The position numbers and the translations under genes are program-made. Shown piece after piece: positions 57-51,610 of a DNA stretch of 51,820 nucleotides. The DNA is taken from the NCBI RefSeq assembly GCF_001194135.2, contig NC_068993.1, positions 61,675,975 to 61,727,794 of the forward strand, given 5' to 3'. The stretch comes from Octopus bimaculoides. Taxonomy: Eukaryota. Position 1 is the first letter of the stretch. Each line of letters begins with the position of its first letter. The notes under the pieces are model-generated. The model did no database searches and was not told the DNA's origin. It worked only from the letters and a program-made list of their open reading frames with translations.

Positions 57-228
57 TTCAATGCTACAATGACAATCAAACTTGGTGGAATAATTGAAGC
101 GTATAACAGATGTTGCCATTTAGGAAATACATATGCCACACCAGCGAGAATCATTGCTCCAATACCGAAAGTTCCATGCATGAGGTAATTCAAACGCATT
201 CTGTAGTTTTGGGTGACACATTCTTGCA
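57..228 (-). CDS. Gene C exon 5 (QECVTQNYRMRLNYLMHGTFGIGAMILAGVAYVFPKWQHLLYASIIPPSLIVIVALK)
   Basis: 172 nt, AG/GTAAGT, open frame. Confidence 0.92.
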
Positions 229-3200
229 CTGTTATATAGAAAAAGACATCAAGCTAAAATGTCTTAATATAATATATTACAAATACAAATAGGGGCTTCA
301 ATTTTTGTCACAAGGCCAGCAATTTTAGGGGATCCCAATGTTCACCTGGTTTTTATTTTATCAACACCGAAAGGATGAAAGGCAAAGTCGGCCTCGGCGG
401 AATTTGAACTCAGTTTTCAACCATCGGTTCAATCAAAGTTACACTTCACCAGAATTTGCAGCGTTTACCCTTTACTTGTTTCAGTCATTAGAGTGCGACC
501 ATGCTGGGGTACGGCTTTCAAGAATTTTTAGTCAATAGTATCGACCCCAGTACTTATTTTTGAAAGCCTGTTTATTCTATCGGTTTCTATTGTCGAACTG
601 CTAAGTTACAGAGACGTAAGCACACCAGCACCGATTTCAAGAGATGCTGGGGGACAAACTCAGATAGAAAGATACACACACATATGTGCATATATACGGT
701 GGTCTTGCTTCAGTATCTGCGTACCAGACCCATTCACAATACTTTGGTCGGCCTGAGGCTATAGTAGAAGACACTTGCTCAAGGTCTCACACAATGGGAC
801 TGAGCCCGGAACCATGTGGTCGGAGAAGCAAGCTTCTCGCCACACAACCACGCCTGCAGTTGTCTTGTCTCACAGTTATAAATTGATAATATCTCCATGT
901 TCATCGAAGGTCACGATGAAGTACTTTGTATTTCTTCCTTGTGACACATCACTGAATGCCTCTTTCATTACTCACCGATCCGTATCAGATATAAATAATA
1001 AACAATATTTACAGGAATGTCCCTTTCATTAAGACACCTTTATAGCCTTCCTCTTTTAAGGGCCATATGGAAAAACCAAATGTCTTTCGTACATTTCTTG
1101 ACCTGTACTGTGGTAGGGTTGTAAAAACTCCCAATCGTTTTCTTTTGCATGCATCTTTAGTTCACTTGTGGTAATGCCGGTAACTCATGTCTCACGTTGT
1201 CTCCGTTTCTTCATGAACCCCCACTTAATAGGCAAACGAATACACTGTTCTCGGTAGTATAATAATTTTTTTCAGATGGTTCTGCCGTAGTAAGAGAGCA
1301 CCAGGAAATATACCACTAGTGAATAGCAGACAATGTTTCAGATGTAGACAAAAAAAAGAAAACAACAACAAAAAGCCACGATTTACATGCTAAAACTATC
1401 TACTTTAGAAAAGGAGTAATCCAATGGGACTATATTTCTACTCTTCTGATGGTCTTGCTATTTTAAATCAACAAACAAGGCCGGATTTGGATACAAATGT
1501 TATAGAAAAACAATCAACCATCGTTTGTAAACGAGCGTCTTCAAGTTGTATAATCCTCATGATAAACTCGTAATACTAAAGCAAGCAGCAGATGAATTCA
1601 TCAGAGAAATGTATATGAAATAGAGATTAGAAACATACAACAGAATAACGTTCAACAGGTAAAAATTAAGAACGATATCCTGTTAGATACAGTCACAGAA
1701 ATAATAAGAGAATTCAACCAAACACAGATATCTGGGAAGTGTACAATATACAAATTAAAGAAAATATTACATAATAAAGGACATATTTGATGCTCCTACA
1801 ATATGAAATATTCGTGGGCTGAGTGTCATTGATCATAGATATATTTTTTAATTAGGGCTGACCATAGGCTACAAAGCAATCAATTNNNNNNNNNNNNNNN
1901 NNNNNNNNNNNNNNNNNNNNNNNNNNNNNNNNNNNNNNNNNNNNNNNNNNNNNNNNNNNNNNNNNNNNNNNNNNNNNNNNNNNNNNNNNNNNNNNNNNNN
2001 NNNNNNNNNNNNNNNNNNNNNNNNNNNNNNNNNNNNNNNNNNNNNNNNNNNNNNNNNNNNNNNNNNNNNNNNNNNNNNNNNNNNNNNNNNNNNNNNNNNN
2101 NNNNNNNNNNNNNNNNNNNNNNNNNNNNNNNNNNNNNNNNNNNNNNNNNNNNNNNNNNNNNNNNNNNNNNNNNNNNNNNNNNNNNNNNNNNNNNNNNNNN
2201 NNNNNNNNNNNNNNNNNNNNNNNNNNNNNNNNNNNNNNNNNNNNNNNNNNNNNNNNNNNNNNNNNNNNNNNNNNNNNNNNNNNNNNNNNNNNNNNNNNNN
2301 NNNNNNNNNNNNNNNNNTATATATATACATACCCACGCATTGTGCATTTGGACTGTGTGATTTTGTTTGGTAGAGTGGCATATTTCTTTACAACGCATGT
2401 AACTTGCTGGCGTAATCGTTTCTTCGAAAACTTTCAGATGATTGGGTGTTTCTTATTCTAATATTCCTTAAGTCTCTTCATGTTGTCTGTCGAGAGATTT
2501 TCCCTGGCCTTTCTGTAAAATTCGTATCGGTTTCGGTTCAGTTAGAAAGTCCACTGGGATTTTTCTCGACAGTGCTGTTGCGCTTGCGATAGCTGACTTC
2601 GGATTTTTTCGTTGCCATGGTGTATGTATAGTAATTTCCCTTGTGATATGAATTAACTTAATTTCAGTGTTGATTACTATTTCGATCTTCGCAGGAAAGG
2701 TTGTTTCTTTGTATTTACTCAAAAAAGATAACCATTTCTTTTGGCGAGGCTTGTACTAATGGCAAACATTTATAGGAGACTGTATTCACTAACCGGTAGA
2801 ATGAATAAACCTCTATGTCAACGTTTCTGGATTCGACGCCATGATGCTTATGTATATATATATATGTATCTGTGAATATATCTATATGTGTGTGCGTGTG
2901 TGCGTGTGTGCGTAGGTAGGTAGGTAGGCAGGAAGCCATAATAATAATGTTGGTTTCAAATTTCAAGGCCAGTAATTTCGGGGGGAGAGGGTAATCCAAT
3001 TACATTGGCTCTAGTGCTGAACTTGTACTTATTTCATCGACCTGAAAAGGATGAAATATGAAGTGGTTCTCGGTGGAATTTGAGCTCAGGACGAAAGGAC
3101 GGACGAAAGGACGGACGAAAGGACGGACGAAAGGACAGACGAAATGCCGCGAAGTATTTTGCACGGCTTGCTAACGATTTTTGCCTGTTCGCCACCTTAA

Positions 3201-3600
3201 TAATTATTATAATGATATTAGCATTCTGAATTGATCATTATATTGTTAGTAAAATGTAAGATTTGAACTTCAAAATCAGTTATTTAGTTAAAGATATATT
3301 TACAGCTATTGGATGCCATACTGACCCACAAACTACAAACTGACTTGCAATATGGTTAAAAGATCACAAACCATAGATCTATCATTGTTCAGACAAAACA
3401 CATAGTGCACCTGGTTGGCGTCTTAGAGAAAGTAAAGATTATATACTTACGCGTCTGAAAGTGTACCAAAAACTATATTTCCAACAAGAAATCCTGCAAA
3501 CATTGCTGACACCGCAATGTTTTTCAACCAGTTTCTTTCGCAAACCAAATCAAACTGAAGAAAATCAGAATAACATTTTAAACAGCGCTAATTATTAAAG

Positions 3601-3653
<53 letters not shown>

Positions 3654-6600
3654 TGTGTATCAAACATAGCAATATTTGCCGTGGGAGAACCTTTTATACA
3701 GGCGGCAATGTATATCCTACATTCAGTAGGATCTACATCGCCATTTGGAATTAATGCAGCTCCCGTCGCTAATATTTATATTTAGATAATTTAATTAAAA
3801 ATAGTGATAAGTTCATTGACGAATGTCAAACATTCTGAATGAACTCGAATTTGTCCTTAATTTAAAGAGCAGAAACGAAAATATGGTGGAAAATACTGGG
3901 GACCCTCGGAGAAAAGTAAATATTTGATTTTATATCTCTTCAACCTTTAAGATTAGTGAATATATTTATATATATATATTCCATGAAGGAATAAATTACA
4001 AACATTTCGTCAGCCGGAATCTATAGAAATATAGAAAGTGGACGACTTTATCTACATTGGTATCCCTAACCCACTTTGTTTATTTCTTTTCATTGCCGTA
4101 CATTTTAATCATTACAATTTTCCACTAAATTTCGTATTTCTTCTGCCACACGGAATTTTCTGTCTAGAAAATTTCCTTTCTCACTGCATAAATAATCATT
4201 AAATGCTGCAAACTGTGGAATTGTTTTTCGCAAAGATTTCCCTTTACGTTAATCAGAAAACTAAAATTTATCTACAACATCTACTGAAATTTCCGTTTAT
4301 TGAAATCACGATTTTATAAGACTTANNNNNNNNNNNNNNNNNNNNNNNNNNNNNNNNNNNNNNNNNNNNNNNNNNNATTACACGGTTCCTTTGTAGAATT
4401 ACTGGTGGGAAGGATATAAAACCCTTCTTTAGTATCCAGGTTATACACAGAGCATCTCTCATCTTCGACAGCTGCTTTGTTTAAGAATTCATCCAAGGTG
4501 ATATTTGGTGGAATCAAAGATTCATTGAAATTTGAAGGATAACAAGCAAACGGAACTCCCTCTCTTATAAACACCATTGTTAATATAGCTTGAGAGTGAG
4601 ATATTACAAAAATTAAAGTATAAATAGTAAGTTTCTTTTGAAATAAACCAAATCCACCACATTTCTTCAATATTTCTTCTGTAATTTCAGATACTGACAA
4701 ATCTAAAATTGAAAACAAAGCAAACATTCTTTCGTAAATAAATTTCAAATGAATCGTTATCATTTAACCTTTTGGGGTCGATAAAATAAATATCTGATGA
4801 GCATTGGGTTTGATGTAATCGATAGCCCCCAACCTCAAATTTAAGACCTTGTGCCTATAGTAGAAAAGATATTAATTACTAGCCTACTATAAGGCGACGA
4901 GTTGGTAGAAACGTTAGCACGCCGGACGTAATGCTTAGCGATATTTCGTCCGCCATTACGTTCTGAGTTCAAATTCCACCTAGATCGACTTTGCCTTTCA
5001 TCCTTTCGGGTTCGATTAAATAAGTACCAGTTACGCACTGGGGTAGATATAATCGACTTAATCCGTTTGTCTGTCCTTGTTTGTCCCCTCTGTGTGTAAC
5101 CCCTTGTGGGCAGTAAAGAAATAGGTATTTCGTTTGTCTTTACGTTCTGAGTTCAAATTCCGCCAAAGTCGACTTTACTTTCATCCTTTCGGGGTCGATA
5201 AATTAAGTACCAGTTCCGTACTGAGGTCGATCTAACCTACTGGCCCTCCAAAAATTTCGGCCTTGAGCCTAGAGTAGAAAAAAAAAAGAGTTACTAGCCC
5301 ACTATGGAGCTCACGCTTATTAAACCTTATTATTGACATAATCTCCGGTATTTACATAACTTTCTCTGGCGCGGTTTAAAAGTTTTTTTTTTAAATTGCA
5401 TCCTTAATATTTCCTCGGCGATTTCAGATATTAACTAATCTGAAATTTTAAATGAAACAAAATTTATTCTGATAATTAATTTGTAAGAAATATTAGTTTC
5501 TTAACAATTCTTTCTACAATAGGCACAAAACCGGAAATTTTAGATACCGGCTCCAATTTTAAAACTGGTACTTATTTTATCGATTTCGATGGAATTTGAA
5601 CTCAGCCGGAAGAAATGTCGCCAAGTACTATGTCCGGCGTGCAAACAATTCTGCCAGCGAGCCGTCTTATTTCCACTTAAGCCTTTCTCTTATAAGAACG
5701 AAGCCTGTAATATTATTTGGTGCGTTAATTCGATCACATCGATCCCAGTGTTCAGTTGATAGTTATGTTATCGACCCCCCCACCACAAAGAGATGAAAGG
5801 TAAAGAAGACTTTGGTTGGATTTTGAACTCAGAACATAACGAAATGCCGCTAAGCATTTTCCCGGAACGCCAAGGATTCCGCCTGCTCCCCGCCTTTCCT
5901 TATCTTAGTAACAAAGAATTGCAGTGTAACTTTGAGTAACCTAGTTTGTCTGTAATTAATACCAAAGGGGAAATTCTTACAGGAAGCAGTTTATTTTTTT
6001 TATTCCGGTTCTTTTTTTTATATTTCCAGGTTTTATGATTCAGCTTGAAAATCCAGACCGGATAGTTATGGACGCCGTTGGGAAGGTTTATCATTTCTAT
6101 ATAAATACGCTAGTGTATGTATCATGTGTTGCAATGGGGAAAAAGGGAGGTAAAGAGATAGGTCGAAATAGAGGGAGAAAGAAAGAAAGAAGGAAAGAAA
6201 GAAAGAAAGAGGGAGAGAAAGAAAGAAAAAGAGAGAGTGGTATGAACTTTTCTCTTTAACGAAAATGAAGTTTTAAAACAACAGAGTATTAAGCATTGTG
6301 AGAGCTTTACCAAATAATCGAACCATAACAGACAGTCCGTATTCCTAGCATAATTATAATATCGGCGGCATCGGTTAGATGTTCTTCAAGTGATATAGCA
6401 TTAATAAACGTTTAACTGAGGGTTGTTTATTCTTTCTGACTAGTGAGGATAAACAACCCTCAGTTAAACGTTTATTGATGCTACATCGCCCGAAGAAACG
6501 AATCCTTGAAGATGATCTACACTACGGATTACAAGATAATTACTGTTGTTATTACTATATATATATACATACTCCTACACCGACAACAGCACACACAGGT

Positions 6601-6817
6601 GAGCATACACATAAAAACACACATACACACACACATATAGAAACAAATATACGCACACATATACATTTATGTACATTCATTCAAACACAGAAAACATGAT
6701 GGCATTATAAAATGAAAAAAAAAAAAAATGAGAGTAAACGAAAATATTCAGACCTTTGAATTCTCCAACATCTAATTCCTCGTGTAATTCCTTTAAAACG
6801 CTTGGCTCATCCTCCAT
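57..6817 (-). CDS. SLC22-family gene C, 5' part (exons 1, 2, 3, 5 visible; exon 4 not visible; continues left of the window)
   Basis: Exons 6754-6817, about 4327-4702 (3' end in an N gap), 3451-3554 and 57-228 are homologous to gene B exons, with identical sizes where both ends are visible. Confidence 0.85.
291..415 (-). mobile_element. SINE family B fragment
   Basis: Matches the other family B copies (ggatgaaaggcaaagtcg...aatttgaactcag). Confidence 0.8.
471..858 (-). mobile_element. tRNA-derived SINE family A, near full length
   Basis: Shares head, body and tail with 30832-31228, 41512-41935, 43955-44392. Confidence 0.85.
2958..3200 (-). mobile_element. SINE family B with internal 12-nt tandem repeat (ggacgaaaggac)x4
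   Basis: Homology to the other B copies. Confidence 0.85.
3451..3554 (-). CDS. Gene C exon 3 (FDLVCERNWLKNIAVSAMFAGFLVGNIVFGTLSDA)
   Basis: 104 nt, AG/GTAAGT. Confidence 0.92.
4327..4702 (-). CDS. Gene C exon 2 (last ~50 nt in N gap)
   Basis: ORF 4323..4763. The 51-N gap fits the 48 nt of coding sequence plus the donor G expected from gene B; taagt follows the gap. Confidence 0.9.
4775..5285 (+). mobile_element. SINE family B: 3' half (4775-4875) plus full dimeric copy (4890-5285)
   Basis: Head aaggcgacgagttggtagaaacgttagcacgcc; the ttacgttctgagttcaaattcc unit is internally duplicated. Confidence 0.9.
5520..5897 (-). mobile_element. Two SINE family B copies (5520-5672, 5722-5897)
   Basis: Homology to family B, inverted relative to 4890-5285. 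Confidence 0.8.
6383..6496. repeat. Long inverted repeat (48-bp arms, 18-nt loop)
   Basis: 6403-6430 is the exact reverse complement of 6449-6476; the stem extends to 43/48 matches. Confidence 0.95.
6754..6817 (-). CDS. Gene C coding exon 1 (MEDEPSVLKELHEELDVGEFK+G)
   Basis: aacATGG, 64 nt, donor GTCTGA; aligns with gene B exon 1, including its flanks. Confidence 0.8.
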
Positions 6818-7367
6818 GTTACAATCAGTAGTTGTCTCGTTGCAATCTCTACTGAAAAACGCCGCCTAATGACGTGATTATGAAAACAGACTGGTTCATA
6901 CAATTATATTATGGAGCGTAAAAAACGAAAAAAGCGATAAGCTGACAGAATCATTAGCATGCCGAATAAATTGCTTATCGGCATTTCGTCCGTCATACGT
7001 TCTGAATTTAAATTCTGTCACAATTCGACTCGGTAAGACTAGGCAGCAGTGATAGAAGGGGGTCTAGTCAGGTTAAAACTCTTCAACTTTCAAGATTGCA
7101 GGGCAAGTCACTCACCATCAGGTCTTCTGACAGATTCTCATGTGCTGTGCCCACAATGCCGAGAAGCGGAGAATCGTTAAGCTCGAGTTACAGTCAAAAA
7201 GGTTTCTTTCTTCGCGGGTTGTAGGTACCAGCATCCTTGGTTTCTAGAATATCGCTCTTCTCTGTCAAATTAGAACGATATAGTCATGATTTTTTCCGTT
7301 TCGCTTTTGCTACCCTCCTGTATATAGAGTATAATTAAAACAAATCATTTAGCAGGACATACATACT

Positions 7368-7502
<135 letters not shown>

Positions 7503-7721
7503 GTGTCTATGAGTATCTGTTCGTCTCTATGTGGTCATGTGTTCGTGAATATCTAATTGTGAGTTTATGCAACTTTTGAGACGTGTAACAGTTTCTTATG
7601 TTTATCTGCCTTCGTGTCTGCCCATACATGTTAATATATCCATATATGTTAATACATGCATACATATATACATACATACACACACACATAATACATACAT
7701 ACATAATACATACCTACATAC

Positions 7722-7800
<79 letters not shown>

Positions 7801-7809
7801 TGTGTACAT

Positions 7810-8625
7810 ATACAAGATGCAGTCAATATATTGTCTGAATTATGCAAAAATGAAAATATCACTGACGTCTCATTTTAACAGATATATTTACCAAATTTAC
7901 ATAAAAGATATCTCGAAATACTAAAGAGTAAATTTATTCAATAAAATCGCCATTGGCTTCAACAACTGTCTCGAGACGACTTCGGAATCTCCTGCAACTC
8001 TTCTGGACGGTCTCCTTGTTGAAGTTGGTGAATAGTGACATAATCCTTGCCTTCAGTTCATCTTTGATGTTACAAGGAGTTTTGTTGGTCTCCCGCTCAA
8101 CTGCGCCCCACATATAATAATCAAGGGGTTGAAGTCTGGGGAGTTAGGTGGCCAGATGTTAGGAGTGATGTGGTTGCAAAAATTCTCTGACAGCCATGAC
8201 TGGCTTCTCCTACTTCCCCTGGCACGGTGCAGAGTCTTGTTACCAGGCCTAGGATTTTCCAGCAGCCACCCTTTTCACCCAGAGCAGCACTACTTCCCCC
8301 ACGCACTTGATGTAGGCCTCCGTGCTGAGTTTGAGGCCGTGTGGGAAGATGAATGGAGGCATAACGTCGCCATCACAAGTGATCACTCCAAACACCATGA
8401 TGTTGACTGGATGTTTGATCTTTATCACTCTCAGTACATGTCCTCAGATTGCACTGTCCTCAGATCGACACCCAAACACTTTGAAATATTCGTATCGGAG
8501 CTTGCGGCGTGAATACAAGCTGTACGGTACGTCGTTTCCAATTTTCTGGCAGAATGAATTGCGTCATGGTGCTGTTTTTCTCTGTATCTAGCGTGGTGGT
8601 ATCTTTTAGATACCCTTAATTATAA
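7810..8625 (-). mobile_element. Internally deleted maT (DD37D) Tc1/mariner-superfamily transposon relic
   Basis: The minus strand gives QDSAPC...WLSENFCNHITPNIWPPNSPDFNPLDYYMWGAVERETNKTPCNIKDELKARI...EANGDFIE, with a frameshift. D-to-D spacing is 37 once the frameshift is corrected. The N-terminus MTQFILPENWKR is fused directly to the IKHPVNIMVFGVI region. Confidence 0.85.
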
Positions 8626-8689
8626 TTTTAATAATAATTATTACCTATGTATGTATATAACTGTATAATCTGGTCGTAATCCGGTCGAA

Positions 8690-9310
8690 AAACGTTTCTT
8701 GTTGCGTAAAAGAAGGGAAGACGACACTTCAAAACGGCGTTTTTTTTTTTTTTGGTTGTCGTTCAATTCGTGCGGCACCCATTTCTCAAGTATTTTTGTT
8801 TTTCCAATCTCTTTCAAGTGGTTGGAAATTGTCGTATACGTTACGTCTAATTCAGAAGCAAGCTCTCGAACAGTTGTGCGTGGATTGGCTTCCACGAAAG
8901 CTCTCAGTTGATCGTTGTCAACATCCGATGGCCGACCACTACGCTTAGCATCTTCAAGACTCTCGTCACCGCTACGAAATTTCTTGAACCACCATTATGC
9001 TGTACGTTCATTAGTGGTTCCTGGGCCAAACACATCGTTGATATCGCGAGCTGCTTCAGTAGTTTTTCGGCCTAGCTTGAACTAGAATAAGAAAATTGTG
9101 CGAATTTGCATTTTGGGAATGTTGTATTCAACTTTCCGGAAAAAATGGCGTAATTATTCAAAAAGAAAAAGAGTAACACGATTAGATAGAGCGAAAACAG
9201 ACTTTAAAATGATGTATAAAGTCAAAGTAATTTAAGGAGAATTAATTTGAAAATACATCATTTAAAAACAAAATTAAACATTTCGCAAGAACTTTCTTGA
9301 CCACCTAATA
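8690..9310 (-). mobile_element. Mariner transposon 5' half (TIR plus DNA-binding domain), truncated before the catalytic domain
   Basis: GRPSDVDNDQL...ANPRTTVRELASEL...KWVPHEL; begins TA-TTAGGTGGTCAAGAAAG, typical of a mariner TIR. Confidence 0.9.
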
Positions 9311-9315
9311 TTTCC

Positions 9316-9800
9316 GACTCATCGATGGTGACACTGCTTGGCGACGTCTAATGCTTTTAGAAGCAAAGGTCTGGATATTGACCGGTAAAAGTCGACAATA
9401 TTAAACTGTATAAACTTGCAATTATGCTTATGGCTAATCCCTTTAAACCAATCTATTACTGACTTGCTATTATTCCAAATCCGTAAATTTAATTCACTAT
9501 CTAACTTAGTTAAAATACAATCTAAAATATATTTGCTAATAAAACCTATTTCAGTTTTAGCAGGATTAATCAATCTACATTTAGGGTTTCTATTAAAATT
9601 AGCTTTATGGTCTTTTAGGGTAATAAAAGGGTGGCGCGGAGGGAGATATTCTATCCTATCACTAACTTTAAGATTGTTAGCAATTCTTCTTGCCTCCAAA
9701 TTCACTTCTTTGTATATATTTGCGTTGTCTTCTTTGTATGTATCTGTGATGTTATTCGAAATTAGACGCTTTTAAACGTCCTTATCAACTGCATATAAGA
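9316..9800 (-). mobile_element. Penelope-like element, reverse transcriptase relic
   Basis: ITLKDHKANFNRNPKCRLINPAKTEIG...FIQFNIVDFYRSIS..LLLKAL matches Penelope-type RT motifs. Confidence 0.85.
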
Positions 9801-10689
9801 TCTTTGTCTTATCAAAGTTCACGAAGATCATATATACATAAACGTATAGATGTATGCATATTCCTATGAACATTCGTGTATGAGTATGTGAGAGAGTGAG
9901 ATAGTGGGAGGGAGAGAATGTATAATTATATAATTGTATAACAGTAAATAATAACCTCCCTGTTGATTACTCCATTATTTTCGCTAACGCTCATTGCAAA
10001 CAACTATAGTCTTATACCTGTAAAGTATAATCTGATTTGGGTTAATTTCATATGATCAAGTCTGACTAGATAGCACGTTCTGTCGTTGAACAACGTACTC
10101 TATTACATGATGCTGTATTCTGTTTACTTGACCATGGGTACCAGTCTGAAAGTAGTGCTGCTCTTTCTCTCCTCGGGTGTCACATTCTTGATATTTGGCT
10201 GGTACATGCCCAGGAGGGTCTGTTTCTGCTTGTGATTACATAGGCATGTAAAACAATGATCGTGCTAACTTGAGAGTGCCGAATGAACCGCTGGACTGAC
10301 TGATGGTCAGGTTGATGGATGTATAACTGACTATTCCGAGATCGTCTCCGCTGTTTACATCATCTTTCGTGTTGCTGTTTATTGGAATCAACGGATGACT
10401 GTACTATTAAGTTCTGTTTAGGTGAAACTTCTAAACATCAAAGTGCTAACATTTAAATATAAATAAAACGTGACAGTTGTACAAAATATTACATTACATA
10501 TAGAGTAAAAACACAACGGGGTAGACTTATCAGAAGGGACTATAATGAACGAGGGGGTTGTAGAAAGGAGACAAAAACAGACGATGTAGATGCAAAGGAA
10601 AGGAATGGAATATGAAATTTACACTCAAACACACGCACACACGCACACGCACGCGCGCACACACACACACGCACACACACACACACACA

Positions 10690-10870
10690 CAGTGTGCGTT
10701 GGGTAAAATCTCGCCAGTTTATATTTTTAATTTCGCGCATGCGCATTGTAAGATTTTGGTTTTGTTGATTACTCAGTATAGTAGAGTCAGTTGGGCACCG
10801 TCTGTGAGAAAAACAGCACCATGACGGACTTCTATCTTCCAGAAAACTGGGAACGGCATGCTGCACCAAC
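10690..10870 (+). mobile_element. 5' end of a second maT-like element
   Basis: gagaaaaacagcaccATGACG is shared with 8545-8585 in the opposite orientation and translates to MTDFYLPENWERHA. Confidence 0.65.
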
Positions 10871-11118
10871 GAAACATATTGCAATATGGAATATATATAC
10901 CTCTGCTATATATGCTATATCAACTCTCGTTCCAACATAAATTTCCGGATTATTCACACAAGGATTAATTTGCACGAATTTCTACACGGACATTTACCAC
11001 TGGAATGAAAATACACTTCAAGTACTGTTCTCTCTTTTTTCAGCACATCACACTCTTTACCACTTCATACTAAAAATATCCGCCTATGGATATAATAATA
11101 GATTACTTTATTTTTTCT

Positions 11119-11167
11119 GTCTCCGATGAAGGGATGTACTGGATCTTCCCAGAAACAGCTGTAAGAC
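11119..11167 (+). ncRNA. Minimal type I hammerhead ribozyme-like motif (Penelope terminal-repeat relic)
   Basis: gtct-CCGATGA-a-GGGA...TCCC-a-GAAAC-AGCT-GTA-agac: helix I 4 bp, helix II 4 bp, palindromic helix III ACAGCTGT, GUA triplet. Confidence 0.6.
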
Positions 11168-11569
11168 TCTATCCATAAAATTCTTCAACCTTACCTTTGC
11201 TCTCTTTATCTTTNNNNNNNNNNNNNNNNNNNNNNNNNNNNNNNNNNNNNNNNNNNNNNNNNNNNNNNNNNNNNNNNNNNNNNNNNNNNNNNNNNNNNNN
11301 NNNNNNNNNNNNNNNNNNNNNNNNNNNNNNNNNNNNNNNNNNNNNNNNNNNNNNNNNNNNNNNNNNNNNNNNNNNNNNNNNNNNNNNNNNNNNNNNNNNN
11401 NNNNNNNNNNNNNNNNNNNNNNNNNNNNNNNNNNNNNNNNNNNNNNNNNNNNNNNNNNNNNNNNNNNNNNNNNNNNNNNNNNNNNNNNNNNNNNNNNNNN
11501 NNNNNNNNNNNNNNNNNNNNNNNNNNNNNNNNNNNNNNNNNNNNNNNNNNNCGATTATTCAGTAGCCAT

Positions 11570-12916: not shown

Positions 12917-13034
12917 ACGGACGCACGTACCGTTCGTTTTCGCCAGGACGGACGTACGTTCAGGCAAAAGCGACGGACGCACGTAGAAAGTCGAAAACTT
13001 GTGAGAAATTAACATAAGTATAATTACTAAATTT

Positions 13035-13240
13035 TGCTTTAAAATTTTGGCACAATGCCAGCAATTTCAAGGGTTAGAGTAAGTCGGTTACAATGACCCC
13101 AGTGCTCAACTGGTACTTAATTTATCGACTTCGAAAGGATGAAAGGCTAAGTTGACCTCAGTGGAATTTGAACTCAGAACGCAAAGACGAACGAAACGCC
13201 GTTAAGCATTTTGCTAACGATTCTGCCAGCTCACCGCTTT
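13035..13240 (-). mobile_element. SINE family B just 3' of the gene B stop (probable 3' UTR)
   Basis: Homology to family B. Confidence 0.85.
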
Positions 13241-13349: not shown

Positions 13350-26835
<13,486 letters not shown>

Positions 26836-27179: not shown

Positions 27180-27975
27180 ACGCTTTTGTCAAGGGCCTTT
27201 TACTATAGCCCCGGGTTGACCGGTGGGAATTTGATAGACAGAATCCGAATGGAAGCCCGTCGTATATATATATATANNNNNNNNNNNNNNNNNNNNNNNN
27301 NNNNNNNNNNNNNNNNNNNNNNNNNNNNNNNTATATACATACATATATATATATATATACATATCTATGTATGTATGTATATATGAGTTATAAGTGTGTC
27401 TGTCTGTATGTTTCCCCTCCCACCCTCTCACACACCACTCAACCACTGTATTTAGCTTGTTTGTATCTCCGTAACTTAGCAGGTTGGTCTAACAGACCTA
27501 TACAATAAGTACCAGACTTTGAAATAAGTACGGGGGAATGCGAAGTTTTATTCGCCATTTGAACTCAGAACGTAATGATGGACGAAATGGCGCAAAGCAT
27601 TTTGGCAGACGTCCTAAAAATTCTGCCAGCTCGCTGCCTTATTGAAGATTAATATCATCAGCTCTGGAAGAATGAATAGCAACATTGACTTGAGCGTGAA
27701 ACGAACTCAGAACATAAGTACTAATCATGTGTTTTGTAATTCTCCGCCTATTCTAATATTGATTTCAAATTTTGGCACAAGGCCATGAATTTCAGCGCAA
27801 AAAGTAAGGTGATTACATCGACCCCGACACTCGACTGGTGTTTATTTTATCGACTCCGAAACAATAGAAGGCAGAGCCGACCTCGGCGGAACTTGAACTC
27901 AGAACAAAGACAGACGAAATGCCCCTAAGCATTTTGCCCGGCGCGCTAACGATTCAGCCAGCTCGCCGCCTTCCC
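27180..27975. mobile_element. SINE cluster: family A (+, about 27180-27530) and two family B (-, about 27500-27645 and 27758-27975)
   Basis: Homology to families A and B. Confidence 0.7.
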
Positions 27976-28386: not shown

Positions 28387-28499
28387 GATGATGATTTTTG
28401 TGTGTATGTGTTAGCGTGTATTAGTGTATGTGAGTGTGTAGGCCTGTGCGAGTTTGTGAGAAAAGTTCAGAGCCAAGACACAATGTACAGATACTGGTT

Positions 28500-28635
28500 T
28501 TAAATCTTGGTATACGACCAGTAGTTTCGGGACGGGGGGCGAAATTGATGACATCGACCCCATTGCTCGACTGGTACTTATTTTATCGGTCCCTAAAAGA
28601 TGAAAGGAAAGGTCGACGTCAGCGGAATTCGAACA
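28500..28635 (-). mobile_element. SINE family B fragment
   Basis: Homology to family B. Confidence 0.75.
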
Positions 28636-28664
28636 CAAGACGAGAAATGGATCAGTCTGGTTAC

Positions 28665-29045
28665 GGAGAAGCGATGAGCAATTTTCATATCTGCGCATTT
28701 TCTGATTTTCATTCAAATCGTGTGGTACGCATTTGTCGAGCTTTTTTGATTTTCCGATCGCATGCAAATGGTTGCAGGCAATTTTCTGGCTAACTTGAAG
28801 TTCTTTTCCCATTTCTCGAGTGGTTTTACGTTGCATTTTCTCAATGACAATCTTTATTTAACCTTCATCGATGACAGATTGGCGTCCACTAGGCTCACAA
28901 TCTTCAAGGCTCAGGTCTCCACTGCGAAATCGTTTAAACCATTTTTAAGCTGACCACTCTCTGGTCATTTCCTCATCAAATATTTCGTTGATATCGCGAG
29001 CAGTTTTAGCTGATTTACCTCCTTTTCTGAAGTTGAATAGCTAAA
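28665..29045 (-). mobile_element. Mariner transposase N-terminal relic
   Basis: RKTTREMGKELQVSQKIACNHLHAIGKSKKLDKCVPHDLNENQK...LLRNQTDPFL, cut off by a SINE. Confidence 0.85.
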
Positions 29046-29914
29046 TTGCTCGAATATCACGCTTTCACAGTTCCATTTCAGACGATTGCAACAAGAGAAA
29101 AAAATATCAATGTTAATCTATTGATGCATTTGAGCAAGTCTATGTCTGTATTAGCAGACAATTGTAAAAAGATGTTTAAAAAATTAAAAACTCAGCAAAA
29201 CTCCGGTACAAATTCTTCAAAATGTTGCTTACTTTTTACTCAACCTGGCATATATATATATATATATATTAGTGAAAATTAAAGTATAAGCATGGTTTCC
29301 TTTGCCGCGATAGTAAGTTTCTACTGAAGATGAAATTTTTCTGTTTCGTGGATGGCGTGACATTTTCTCGTGCCAACCTTGTCAGTTAGACCGCAAACGC
29401 AGGAATGATGAATCCAACGCTAAAAAGCGGAAAATGGTTTCGCCCAAATTTTGCGCCGGTCATTGTTGTGAACTCCTGCGTCCTTGGTCTTTAGAATGCC
29501 TCTCTTTGGCAAATTTGTTTGATGGAGCCGTGCTCAAGGATGGAACACTATGATGTCGATGGTTGATTCAGCATATATTACTGGCTGTTTATCTTGGTTA
29601 CACTATTGGTGTCCTATATACATAGAACAGTTAAGCCCAAGTATGCAGCAGAAAATGTATACTTTGCGTGTGGGGTATTTTTTCAGTCTATTGCGAGACT
29701 GTATGTAGGTGAATGTGAGGGGCTATGCATGTGCATGCAGTCGTATTTATGTATATGTACATATGTGTGTGTGTATCCTACATATATATATATATATATA
29801 TATAGACAAATACATATATAAATACATACACACACACAGATATATATATATTTCGTGTAACTGTGTATGTATCCCAAGATGCACACACACACACACACAT
29901 ATATACATACAAAC

Positions 29915-36061: not shown

Positions 36062-51137
<15,076 letters not shown>

Positions 51138-51364: not shown

Positions 51365-51610
51365 TTTAATCGTACCAGTCATTTGACTGCGGCCATGCTG
51401 GAGTACCGCCTNNNNNNNNNNCCAGTCATTTGACTGCGGCCATGCTGGAGTACCGCCTTTAGTCGAACAAATCGACCCCATGACTTATTCTTTGTAAGCC
51501 TAGTACTTATTCTATCGGTCGCTTTATTGCCGAATCGCTAGGTTACGGGGACGTAAACACACCAACACCGGTTCTCAAGCAATGGTCGGGGGACAAACAC
51601 AGACACACGT
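51365..51610 (-). mobile_element. SINE family A 3' half
   Basis: Homology to family A. Confidence 0.85.

What the first reader, a model, noticed from the sequence alone, without database searches (positions are those of the whole stretch)
4377..4577. Sharp gene-conversion-like tract makes the extracellular loops of paralogs B and C nearly identical
Seen: this 201-nt part of gene C exon 2 differs from gene B (about 21973-22173) at only 3 positions (98.5%). The adjoining 125 nt of the same exon (TM1) differs at 29, exon 3 at 21/104 and exon 5 at about 45/172. In exon 5, A and B are closer (about 28/172), so the gene tree flips for this tract only. The tract covers the glycosylated, Cys-containing loop (NESL, NITL, NSTK sequons). 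Established: the SLC22 large extracellular loop supports folding, trafficking and oligomerisation, while the TM helices form the substrate cavity. Inference: ectopic conversion homogenises the loop while the cavities diverge. That could keep B and C able to hetero-oligomerise while carrying different substrates, a modular mode of transporter evolution.
Basis: partly seen in the sequence, partly recalled or inferred. Interest (0 to 1): 0.75.

Follow-up and report, generated by a model that had tools for sequence, protein, structure and literature searches.

The report
Gene-conversion patch between two transporter paralogs
Two neighbouring copies of an SLC22-type transporter gene share a 200-300 base patch that is almost identical although the rest of the genes differ by about 20%. 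This most likely records one recent copy-and-paste repair event (gene conversion), an ordinary process, but it touches an assembly gap and needs confirmation from reads.

Summary
The window holds three tandem SLC22-like genes on the minus strand: A, B and C. C 4377-4577 differs from B 21972-22172 at 3 of 201 positions. The same pair differs at 29/125 in the adjoining TM1 part of exon 2, 21/104 in exon 3 and 45/172 in exon 5.

Synonymous divergence is 0.05 in the tract and 0.35-0.63 elsewhere. Paralog A is 17% diverged in the same loop (dS 0.66), so nucleotide-level constraint is excluded. None of 200,000 permutations reproduces the tract.

The best explanation is one recent non-allelic gene conversion, probably B to C, 201 to about 300 nt long (confidence about 0.7).

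The main rival is an assembly artefact (about 0.2), because the tract ends at a 51-N gap. Four points argue against it:
- The tract is the end of a 6.8-kb contig.
- It carries three differences from B, and two of them match paralog A.
- One difference lies 19 nt from C-specific sequence.
- Ordinary paralog pairs share no exact run longer than 29 nt.

No reads from the same species could be found, so this rival stays open.

The functional story (loop homogenised to allow hetero-oligomers) has no support. A is not homogenised, only one event is visible, and the tract does not match the domain boundaries. The phenomenon is ordinary and of modest interest.

The parts
4377..4577 (-). Near-identical tract in gene C exon 2. 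It covers codons [21 protein letters not shown]...NSTKEPCN: the last turn of TM1 plus the first ~60 residues of the large extracellular loop. It is the probable acceptor of the conversion.
   Evidence: 3/201 mismatches to B; dS 0.049; it forms the end of contig 4377-11213.
21972..22172 (-). Matching tract in gene B exon 2, the probable donor.
   Evidence: The tract's distance to A (34/201 = 16.9%) equals A-B distances elsewhere (16-18%), not A-C distances (21-25%).
4326..4376 (.). A 51-N assembly gap. By homology with B it hides the last 48 nt of C exon 2 and about 52 nt of intron 2, and with them the far boundary of the tract.
   Evidence: Unlike 10 of the 15 gaps in the window, it is not in microsatellite sequence.
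4578..4702 (-). The 5' part of gene C exon 2 (N-terminus and TM1), lying in the same contig as the tract and diverged from B.
   Evidence: 29/125 differences, dS 0.51.
4263..4325 (-). Gene C intron 2 flank on the other side of the gap. It is homologous to B 21813-21871 but diverged, so the patch is bounded on both sides.
   Evidence: 74% identity over 65 columns with indels; local score 38 against a shuffle maximum of 27.
50812..51012 (-). The same loop segment in paralog A, used as the comparison copy. It is not homogenised.
   Evidence: 33-34/201 differences to B and C; dS 0.55-0.66.
21924..22297 (-). Complete exon 2 of gene B. The rest of the B coding sequence lies at 21241-21345, 19882-20034, 19385-19556, 18117-18404, 15214-15426, 14314-14421 and 13353-13556.
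   Evidence: tblastn exon map; Pfam Sugar_tr and MFS_1; best PDB matches are SLC22A3, OCT1/2, OCTN2 and OAT1.
3451..3554 (-). Gene C exon 3 (FDLVCERNWLKN...). It encodes the end of the extracellular loop and TM2, and it is diverged from B.
   Evidence: 21 differences in 104 nt.
57..228 (-). Gene C exon 5, where A and B are closer to each other than either is to C.
   Evidence: B-C 45, A-B 28, A-C 42 differences.

Best explanation
A single, fairly recent non-allelic (interlocus) gene conversion between two tandem, same-strand SLC22-like paralogs 17.6 kb apart. The inferred mechanism is that a break in exon 2 of gene C was repaired from the homologous exon of gene B, for example by synthesis-dependent strand annealing. 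This overwrote 201 to about 300 nt of C with B sequence. The patch runs from the last turn of TM1 through most of the exon-2-encoded extracellular loop. It ends inside the N gap, within the last 48 nt of exon 2 or the first ~50 nt of intron 2. Three substitutions have accumulated since: two in B and one in C, judged against paralog A. The result is that 66 of 67 loop residues are identical in B and C. No selection needs to be invoked. Shown directly: the mosaic identity pattern, the identity at synonymous sites, the tree incongruence and the diverged flanks on both sides. Inferred: the repair mechanism, the B-to-C direction, and that the C copy is truly present in the genome.
For: 3/201 differences in the tract, against 29/125, 21/104 and 45/172 in the neighbouring coding segments of the same pair. 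dS is 0.049 in the tract and 0.35-0.63 elsewhere. The loop is free to vary at the nucleotide level: A-B 34/201 with dS 0.66, and the Logan homologues L001 and L006 are 14-23% diverged. Permutation: 0 of 200,000 shuffles reach the observed value. A GENECONV-like run of 16 concordant variable sites exceeds the maximum of 14 seen in 100,000 shuffles. The pattern is mosaic on both sides: the right boundary at 4577/4578 lies inside one contig, and the left flank across the gap is only 74% identical to B intron 2. Exons 3 and 5 and TM1 place A with B, while the tract places B with C. The genes are tandem and on the same strand. Against an artefact: the tract is the end of a 6.8-kb contig. It is not 100% identical to B, and at two of the three differences C carries the base found in A. 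The 4559 variant lies 19 nt from the first C-specific base. Ordinary paralog pairs share exact runs of at most 29 nt, too short for a read-overlap or k-mer chimera. No other segment in the window exceeds 91% identity to another.
Against: The tract ends exactly at an N gap in a fragmented short-read-style assembly with 15 gaps in 52 kb. One boundary is therefore unseen and a gap-filling error cannot be excluded. The inferred direction, B into C, is also what misplacement of B-derived reads would produce. No independent reads, long-read assembly or orthologues from the same species could be retrieved. The arguments about assembler behaviour are inference.
Confidence: 0.7

Rival explanations
1. 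Assembly artefact. The true loop of gene C is diverged, and the contig end next to the gap was extended during gap closing with reads from gene B or from a second haplotype of B, producing a chimeric C.
For: The tract abuts the 51-N gap. The assembly is fragmented, and unmerged overlapping contig ends at the 10-N gaps show imperfect finishing. The tract is B-like in its distance to A. Three differences in 201 nt could be allelic variation in a heterozygous species.
Against: Collapsed or duplicated repeats normally give 100% identity, whereas here there are 3 differences and 2 of them match paralog A, so they are not sequencing errors. The tract is continuous with 6.8 kb of C-specific sequence. 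A chimeric join would have to use only 18 nt of shared sequence (4560-4577), or else the true C would have to share a long exact run with B, and ordinary paralog pairs share at most 29 nt. No other near-identical duplicate occurs at any of the other 14 gaps. A genuine near-identical paralogous repeat is itself a good reason for a contig to break here, in one of the few gaps not in microsatellite sequence.
Confidence: 0.2
2. The extracellular loop is kept homogeneous between B and C by recurrent or selected conversion, so that they can hetero-oligomerise while their substrate cavities diverge.
For: The tract falls in the loop that mediates homo-oligomerisation in rat Oct1, rat Oat1 and human OCT2 (PMC11119549). 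At the protein level the loop is the most constrained segment examined: A-B dN/dS is about 0.16, against 0.24-0.50 in TM1, exon 3 and exon 5.
Against: A is not homogenised. Only one tract exists in one pair. The tract begins inside TM1, and the exon-3-encoded part of the loop is not converted. The tract length is typical of a single neutral event. The two homologues recovered from other sequencing runs differ by 21% in the loop. There are no expression or interaction data.
Confidence: 0.05
3. A one-sided exchange rather than a patch: unequal crossing-over created a hybrid gene, or contig 4377-11213 belongs to another paralog and was mis-scaffolded next to C intron 2.
For: The second boundary is seen only across a scaffold gap.
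Against: The sequence left of the gap is homologous to intron 2 in the right orientation and at the right distance, and it is followed by a C-type exon 3. The estimated gap size is compatible with the roughly 100 nt that are missing.
Confidence: 0.04
4. Purifying selection on the nucleotide sequence, for example an embedded regulatory or RNA element, keeps B and C identical.
For: None beyond the identity itself.
Against: Synonymous sites are identical only in the B-C pair. A, L001 and L006 differ at 14-23% of sites in the same segment. Rfam has no match.
Confidence: 0.01

Closest known systems
Non-allelic (interlocus) gene conversion between tandem duplicates, as described for globins, red/green opsins, RHD/RHCE, CYP21A2/CYP21A1P and olfactory receptors (my own knowledge).
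   Same: A short patch of a few hundred nt, near-identical at synonymous sites as well, embedded in diverged paralogs that are close together and in the same orientation. Local gene-tree incongruence.
   Different: Only one tract in one pair is visible here. One boundary is hidden by an assembly gap, and there is no population or cross-species confirmation.
Region-restricted conversion in clustered protocadherin genes, where some ectodomain regions are homogenised and specificity-determining regions are spared (Noonan et al. 2004, from memory, not checked here).
   Same: Part of an extracellular domain is homogenised among tandem paralogs while other parts diverge.
   Different: In protocadherins the pattern recurs across many paralogs and species, which supports selection on where conversion is tolerated. 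Here paralog A is not involved and recurrence is untested.
Vertebrate SLC22 transporters (OCT1-3, OCTN2, OAT1, URAT1).
   Same: An MFS fold with a large, Cys-containing loop between TM1 and TM2 that carries N-glycosylation sequons. E-values to solved structures are 1e-47 to 5e-68. Tandem genomic clustering.
   Different: These are mollusc-type paralogs of unknown substrate. I found no report of conversion between the loops of SLC22 paralogs.
Paralog collapse or gap-filling artefacts in short-read scaffolds.
   Same: A highly similar paralogous sequence ends at an N gap.
   Different: The sequence is not 100% identical to B, is not an isolated small contig, and carries differences that match a third paralog.

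Membership tests
Interlocus gene conversion tract | A segment with significantly higher identity than the rest of the paralog alignment. | tested here: met
   3/201 in the tract against 95/405 elsewhere. 0 of 200,000 permutations reach this.
Interlocus gene conversion tract | The elevated identity includes synonymous/neutral sites and is not shared by the other paralogs. | tested here: met
   dS for B-C is 0.049 in the tract, while dS for A-B and A-C in the same segment is 0.55-0.66.
Interlocus gene conversion tract | Diverged homologous sequence on both sides, making a patch rather than a crossover. | tested here: inconclusive
   The right boundary lies inside one contig. The left flank is 74% identical to B intron 2 but is seen only across the N gap.
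Interlocus gene conversion tract | Phylogenetic incongruence between the tract and its flanks. | tested here: met
   Exon 5, exon 3 and TM1 show A-B closest (28/171, 17/105, 23/129). The tract shows B-C closest (3/201).
Interlocus gene conversion tract | Both copies are physically present in the genome, confirmed by independent reads. | not testable with these tools
   No reads or second assembly from the same species could be retrieved. Protein searches returned only two Logan ORFs, both diverged from A, B and C.
SLC22 transporter (MFS) | MFS/Sugar_tr fold, with closest similarity to SLC22 members. | tested here: met
   Pfam Sugar_tr 1.5e-28 and MFS_1 3e-19. PDB SLC22A3 5e-68, OCT2 1.5e-66, OCTN2 and OAT1.
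SLC22 transporter (MFS) | A large extracellular loop between TM1 and TM2 with conserved Cys residues and N-glycosylation sequons. | tested here: met
   The translations show NESL, NITL and NSTK and Cys in FACYP, ERCSV and EPCNN. Glycosylation itself was not tested.
Concerted evolution / selected domain homogenisation | Homogenisation recurs across the paralogs of the cluster. | tested here: not met
   A is 16-17% diverged in the loop. A-B and A-C have no low-divergence window, with a minimum of 31-32 differences per 201 nt.
Concerted evolution / selected domain homogenisation | The pattern recurs in related species. | not testable with these tools
   Only two exon-2 homologues from other runs were found (L001, L006). 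They are 21% diverged in the loop and their orthology is unclear.
Assembly duplication artefact | The duplicated copy is identical to the source and forms a small isolated contig or gap fill. | tested here: not met
   There are 3 differences, 2 of which match paralog A. The tract is the end of a 6837-nt contig.
Assembly duplication artefact | The copy lies adjacent to a scaffold gap. | tested here: met
   The tract starts at the first base after N run 4326-4376.

The most novel reading that the evidence does not exclude
Conversion in this cluster is tolerated or favoured specifically in the extracellular loop. On this reading B and C keep a common oligomerisation surface while their transmembrane cavities diverge, which would be a modular mode of transporter evolution like the region-restricted conversion of clustered protocadherins.
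Probability: 0.04. Interest if true: 0.6.

Novelty: new member of a known kind. Interest (0 to 1): 0.25.

Why it matters
If real, this is a clean, datable example of interlocus gene conversion in an invertebrate SLC22 cluster. Per-exon or per-domain trees of these paralogs would then be misleading in exon 2. The extracellular loops of B and C would be functionally interchangeable, which is useful for chimera experiments separating loop from cavity functions. In practice it also marks a spot where short-read assembly and read mapping will be ambiguous. It does not by itself reveal a new evolutionary mechanism.

Tried and rejected
- **Independent sequence for the C loop.** I ran two searches of the 5.8-billion-protein collection, one with the C exon-2 peptide and one with a 5-sequence profile. 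Both returned only two Logan ORFs, P0001 and P0002. Their contigs (L001-L006, runs SRR11869384-94) are 14-29% diverged from A, B and C, and no orthology can be assigned. Neither the same-species test nor the sister-species test was therefore possible.
- **Identity of those runs.** A full-text search for the run accessions gave an unrelated paper.
- **Other conversion tracts or gap-flank duplicates.** A self-BLAST of the window found nothing above 91% identity. A-B and A-C have no low-divergence window.
- **Nucleotide-level constraint or an embedded RNA.** This is rejected by the dS of the other paralog pairs and by empty Rfam and tRNA scans.
- **Published precedent.** A literature search for gene conversion in SLC22 found nothing relevant.
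- **Assembler k-mer size.** I considered inferring it from the overlapping ends at the 10-N gaps. The overlaps are 40, 37 and 7 nt, which is not consistent enough to name a k, so the assembler argument is kept qualitative.

Full report
**What is in the window.** Three paralogous genes lie head-to-tail on the minus strand. A tblastn map with the exon peptides of the middle gene places:
- gene A at about 51141-36065;
- gene B at 22297-13353, in eight coding exons after a short upstream exon;
- gene C from 4702 leftwards, running off the window after exon 5.

The concatenated B peptide matches Pfam Sugar_tr (1.5e-28) and MFS_1. Its best matches among solved structures are SLC22A3/OCT3 (5e-68), OCT2, OCTN2, OCT1 and OAT1. 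These are therefore SLC22-type transporters.

That loop carries the sequons NESL, NITL and NSTK and three cysteines. C exon 4 was not found and probably lies in the 432-N gap at 1886-2317.

**Check of the observation.** C 4377-4577 aligns without gaps to B 21972-22172 with three mismatches, at C 4467, 4494 and 4559. From 4578 onward mismatches come every few bases. The B-C comparison by segment:

| Segment | B-C differences | B-C dS |
|---|---|---|
| Tract (201 nt) | 3/201 | 0.049 |
| Adjoining coding part of exon 2 (TM1, 125 nt) | 29 | 0.51 |
| Exon 3 | 21 | 0.35 |
| Exon 5 | 45 | 0.63 |

A-B differs at 28 sites in exon 5.

In the same 201 nt, paralog A differs from B at 34 sites and from C at 33, with dS 0.55-0.66. 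Two homologous exons recovered from public sequencing runs (L001, L006) differ from B and C by 14-18% and from A by 19-23%. The loop is therefore not conserved at the nucleotide level in general.

The statistics are unambiguous:
- Binomial P is 7e-16 at 20% divergence.
- None of 200,000 permutations of the 98 B-C differences gives a 201-nt window with fewer than 12 differences.
- A GENECONV-like run of 16 concordant variable sites exceeds the maximum of 14 found in 100,000 shuffles.

**Anatomy of the patch.** The right boundary (4577/4578) lies inside a continuous contig and falls in the last turn of TM1 (…LT|MVFIRE…). The left end coincides with the 51-N gap at 4326-4376.

Beyond the gap, C 4263-4325 aligns to B intron 2 (21813-21871) at only 74% identity with indels. 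The local alignment score is 38 against a shuffle maximum of 27. By homology with B, about 100 nt are missing: 48 nt of exon 2 and about 52 nt of intron 2. The patch is therefore bounded on both sides and is 201 to about 300 nt long.

Intron 1 and the alignable stretches of intron 3 are 70-80% identical between B and C, which is the background level for this pair.

**Gene tree and direction.** Exon 5 (A-B 28, A-C 42, B-C 45), exon 3 (17, 22, 21) and TM1 (23, 27, 29) all place A with B. The tract places B with C.

The tract's distance to A is 16.4-16.9%. This equals A-B distances elsewhere (16-18%) rather than A-C distances (21-25%), so the shared sequence is B-type and C is the likely recipient. 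This evidence is moderate, because the loop could simply evolve more slowly than the other segments.

At two of the three differences (4494, 4467) C carries the base found in A, and at the third (4559) B does. The simplest reading is two substitutions in B and one in C since the event.

The ratio of dS in the tract to dS outside it puts the event at roughly a tenth of the age of the B/C split.

**Real or artefact?** This is the crucial question. It cannot be settled with the tools available, because no reads or alternative assembly from the same species could be retrieved.

The window is clearly from a fragmented scaffold assembly:
- It has 15 N runs in 52 kb, and contig pieces of 0.4-7.4 kb.
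- Ten of the gaps sit in TA/CA microsatellites.
- The three 10-N gaps have flanks that overlap by 40, 37 and 7 nt, so they are unmerged contig ends.

Five observations argue against an artefact:
1. The tract is the end of a 6837-nt contig (4377-11213), not an island between gaps.
2. It is not identical to B, and two of its three differences match a third paralog. It therefore derives from reads distinct from those that built B, not from a collapsed repeat or from sequencing errors.
3. The C variant at 4559 lies only 19 nt from the first C-specific base. Any read or k-mer linking them carries B-like sequence further into the loop.
4. A chimeric join needs a shared exact overlap, but ordinary paralog pairs in this exon share runs of at most 29 nt and mostly 20 nt or fewer. 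B and C share runs of 90, 64 and 26 nt.
5. Nothing else in the window is more than 91% identical to anything else, so gap-adjacent paralog copies are not a habit of this assembly.

A genuine near-identical repeat is also a natural cause of a contig break in non-repetitive sequence. On that reading the gap is a consequence of the tract rather than a reason to doubt it.

Against this, gap-closing programs can mis-extend contig ends, and a second haplotype of B could supply the three differences. I put the artefact at about 0.2.

**Mechanism.** The most likely history is a single non-allelic gene conversion: C exon 2 was repaired from B, 17.6 kb away on the same strand. The mosaic pattern is shown directly. 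The repair pathway and the direction are inferred. Tract length, sharp edges, tandem arrangement and same orientation are all typical of this process.

**The functional interpretation.** The literature supports a role for the large SLC22 loop and its cysteines in homo-oligomerisation of rat Oct1, rat Oat1 and human OCT2 (review PMC11119549). Nothing in the sequence indicates that the conversion was selected:
- A is not homogenised, and A-B and A-C show no tract.
- The tract starts inside TM1.
- The part of the loop encoded by exon 3 remains different (FDLACENEW in B, FDLVCERNW in C).
- A single neutral event suffices to explain the pattern.

One fact mildly favours functional importance of this loop segment. 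Its A-B dN/dS of about 0.16 is lower than in TM1 (0.50), exon 3 (0.24) or exon 5 (0.41). That shows purifying selection on the protein, not selection for identity between paralogs.

**Comparison with what is known.** This is a standard interlocus gene-conversion signature. The closest parallel to the 'modular' idea is the region-restricted conversion described for clustered protocadherins (from my own knowledge, not checked here), where recurrence across many paralogs and species supports selection. That recurrence is absent or untested here. A full-text search found no report of conversion between SLC22 paralog loops. This is thus a new instance of a known kind.

**Verdict.**
- Gene conversion is the best explanation (about 0.7).
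- An assembly artefact remains a live rival (about 0.2) until reads are examined.
- The hetero-oligomerisation model is unsupported (about 0.05).
- Interest is modest.

Noticed in passing
window 5405-5482 (minus strand): A dead partial copy of the intron 1/exon 2 junction lies about 700 nt upstream of gene C exon 2. It has the acceptor region plus about 50 nt of exon-2-like sequence (…ISEIAEEIL…), 72-85% identical to the real exons, with an in-frame stop, and it ends in an A-rich run. It suggests past partial duplication or rearrangement in the cluster.
   Followed up: partly
window 24092-24181, 51375-51458, 44216-44239: The three 10-N gaps are flanked by sequences that overlap exactly (40, 37 and 7 nt). 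They are unmerged contig ends, and they create artificial short duplications in the scaffold.
   Followed up: yes
window 8748-9105 (minus strand); similar copy at 28698-29055: A degenerate mariner/Mos1-type transposase fragment with in-frame stops (Pfam HTH_48, 7e-17) lies downstream of gene B. A second copy, 65% identical, lies downstream of gene A.
   Followed up: partly
window 4891-5063, 5124-5289, 13017-13240, 22753-22936, 26378-26595, 27754-27972, 28491-28637, 36294-36520, 50363-50525 and others: An interspersed repeat of about 150-220 nt (SINE-like) has at least ten copies, 67-85% identical, in both orientations, in introns and between the genes. ARAGORN found no tRNA-like part and Rfam found no match.
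   Followed up: partly
window 1886-2317: Exon 4 of gene C was not found by tblastn. From the spacing in B, it probably lies in this 432-N gap, although loss of the exon (C as a pseudogene) is not excluded.
   Followed up: partly
window exon 2 loop segments 50812-51012 / 21972-22172: The N-terminal two-thirds of the extracellular loop is more constrained at the protein level (A-B dN/dS about 0.16) than TM1 (0.50), exon 3 (0.24) or exon 5 (0.41). This is the reverse of the common expectation that the loop is the variable part.
   Followed up: partly
L001 1233-1766: The Logan ORF P0001 matches its contig only if TGA is read as Trp, so the gene caller applied a non-standard code to a eukaryotic intron-exon stretch. 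The 'protein' is therefore an exon with read-through into intron sequence, not a real product.
   Followed up: yes
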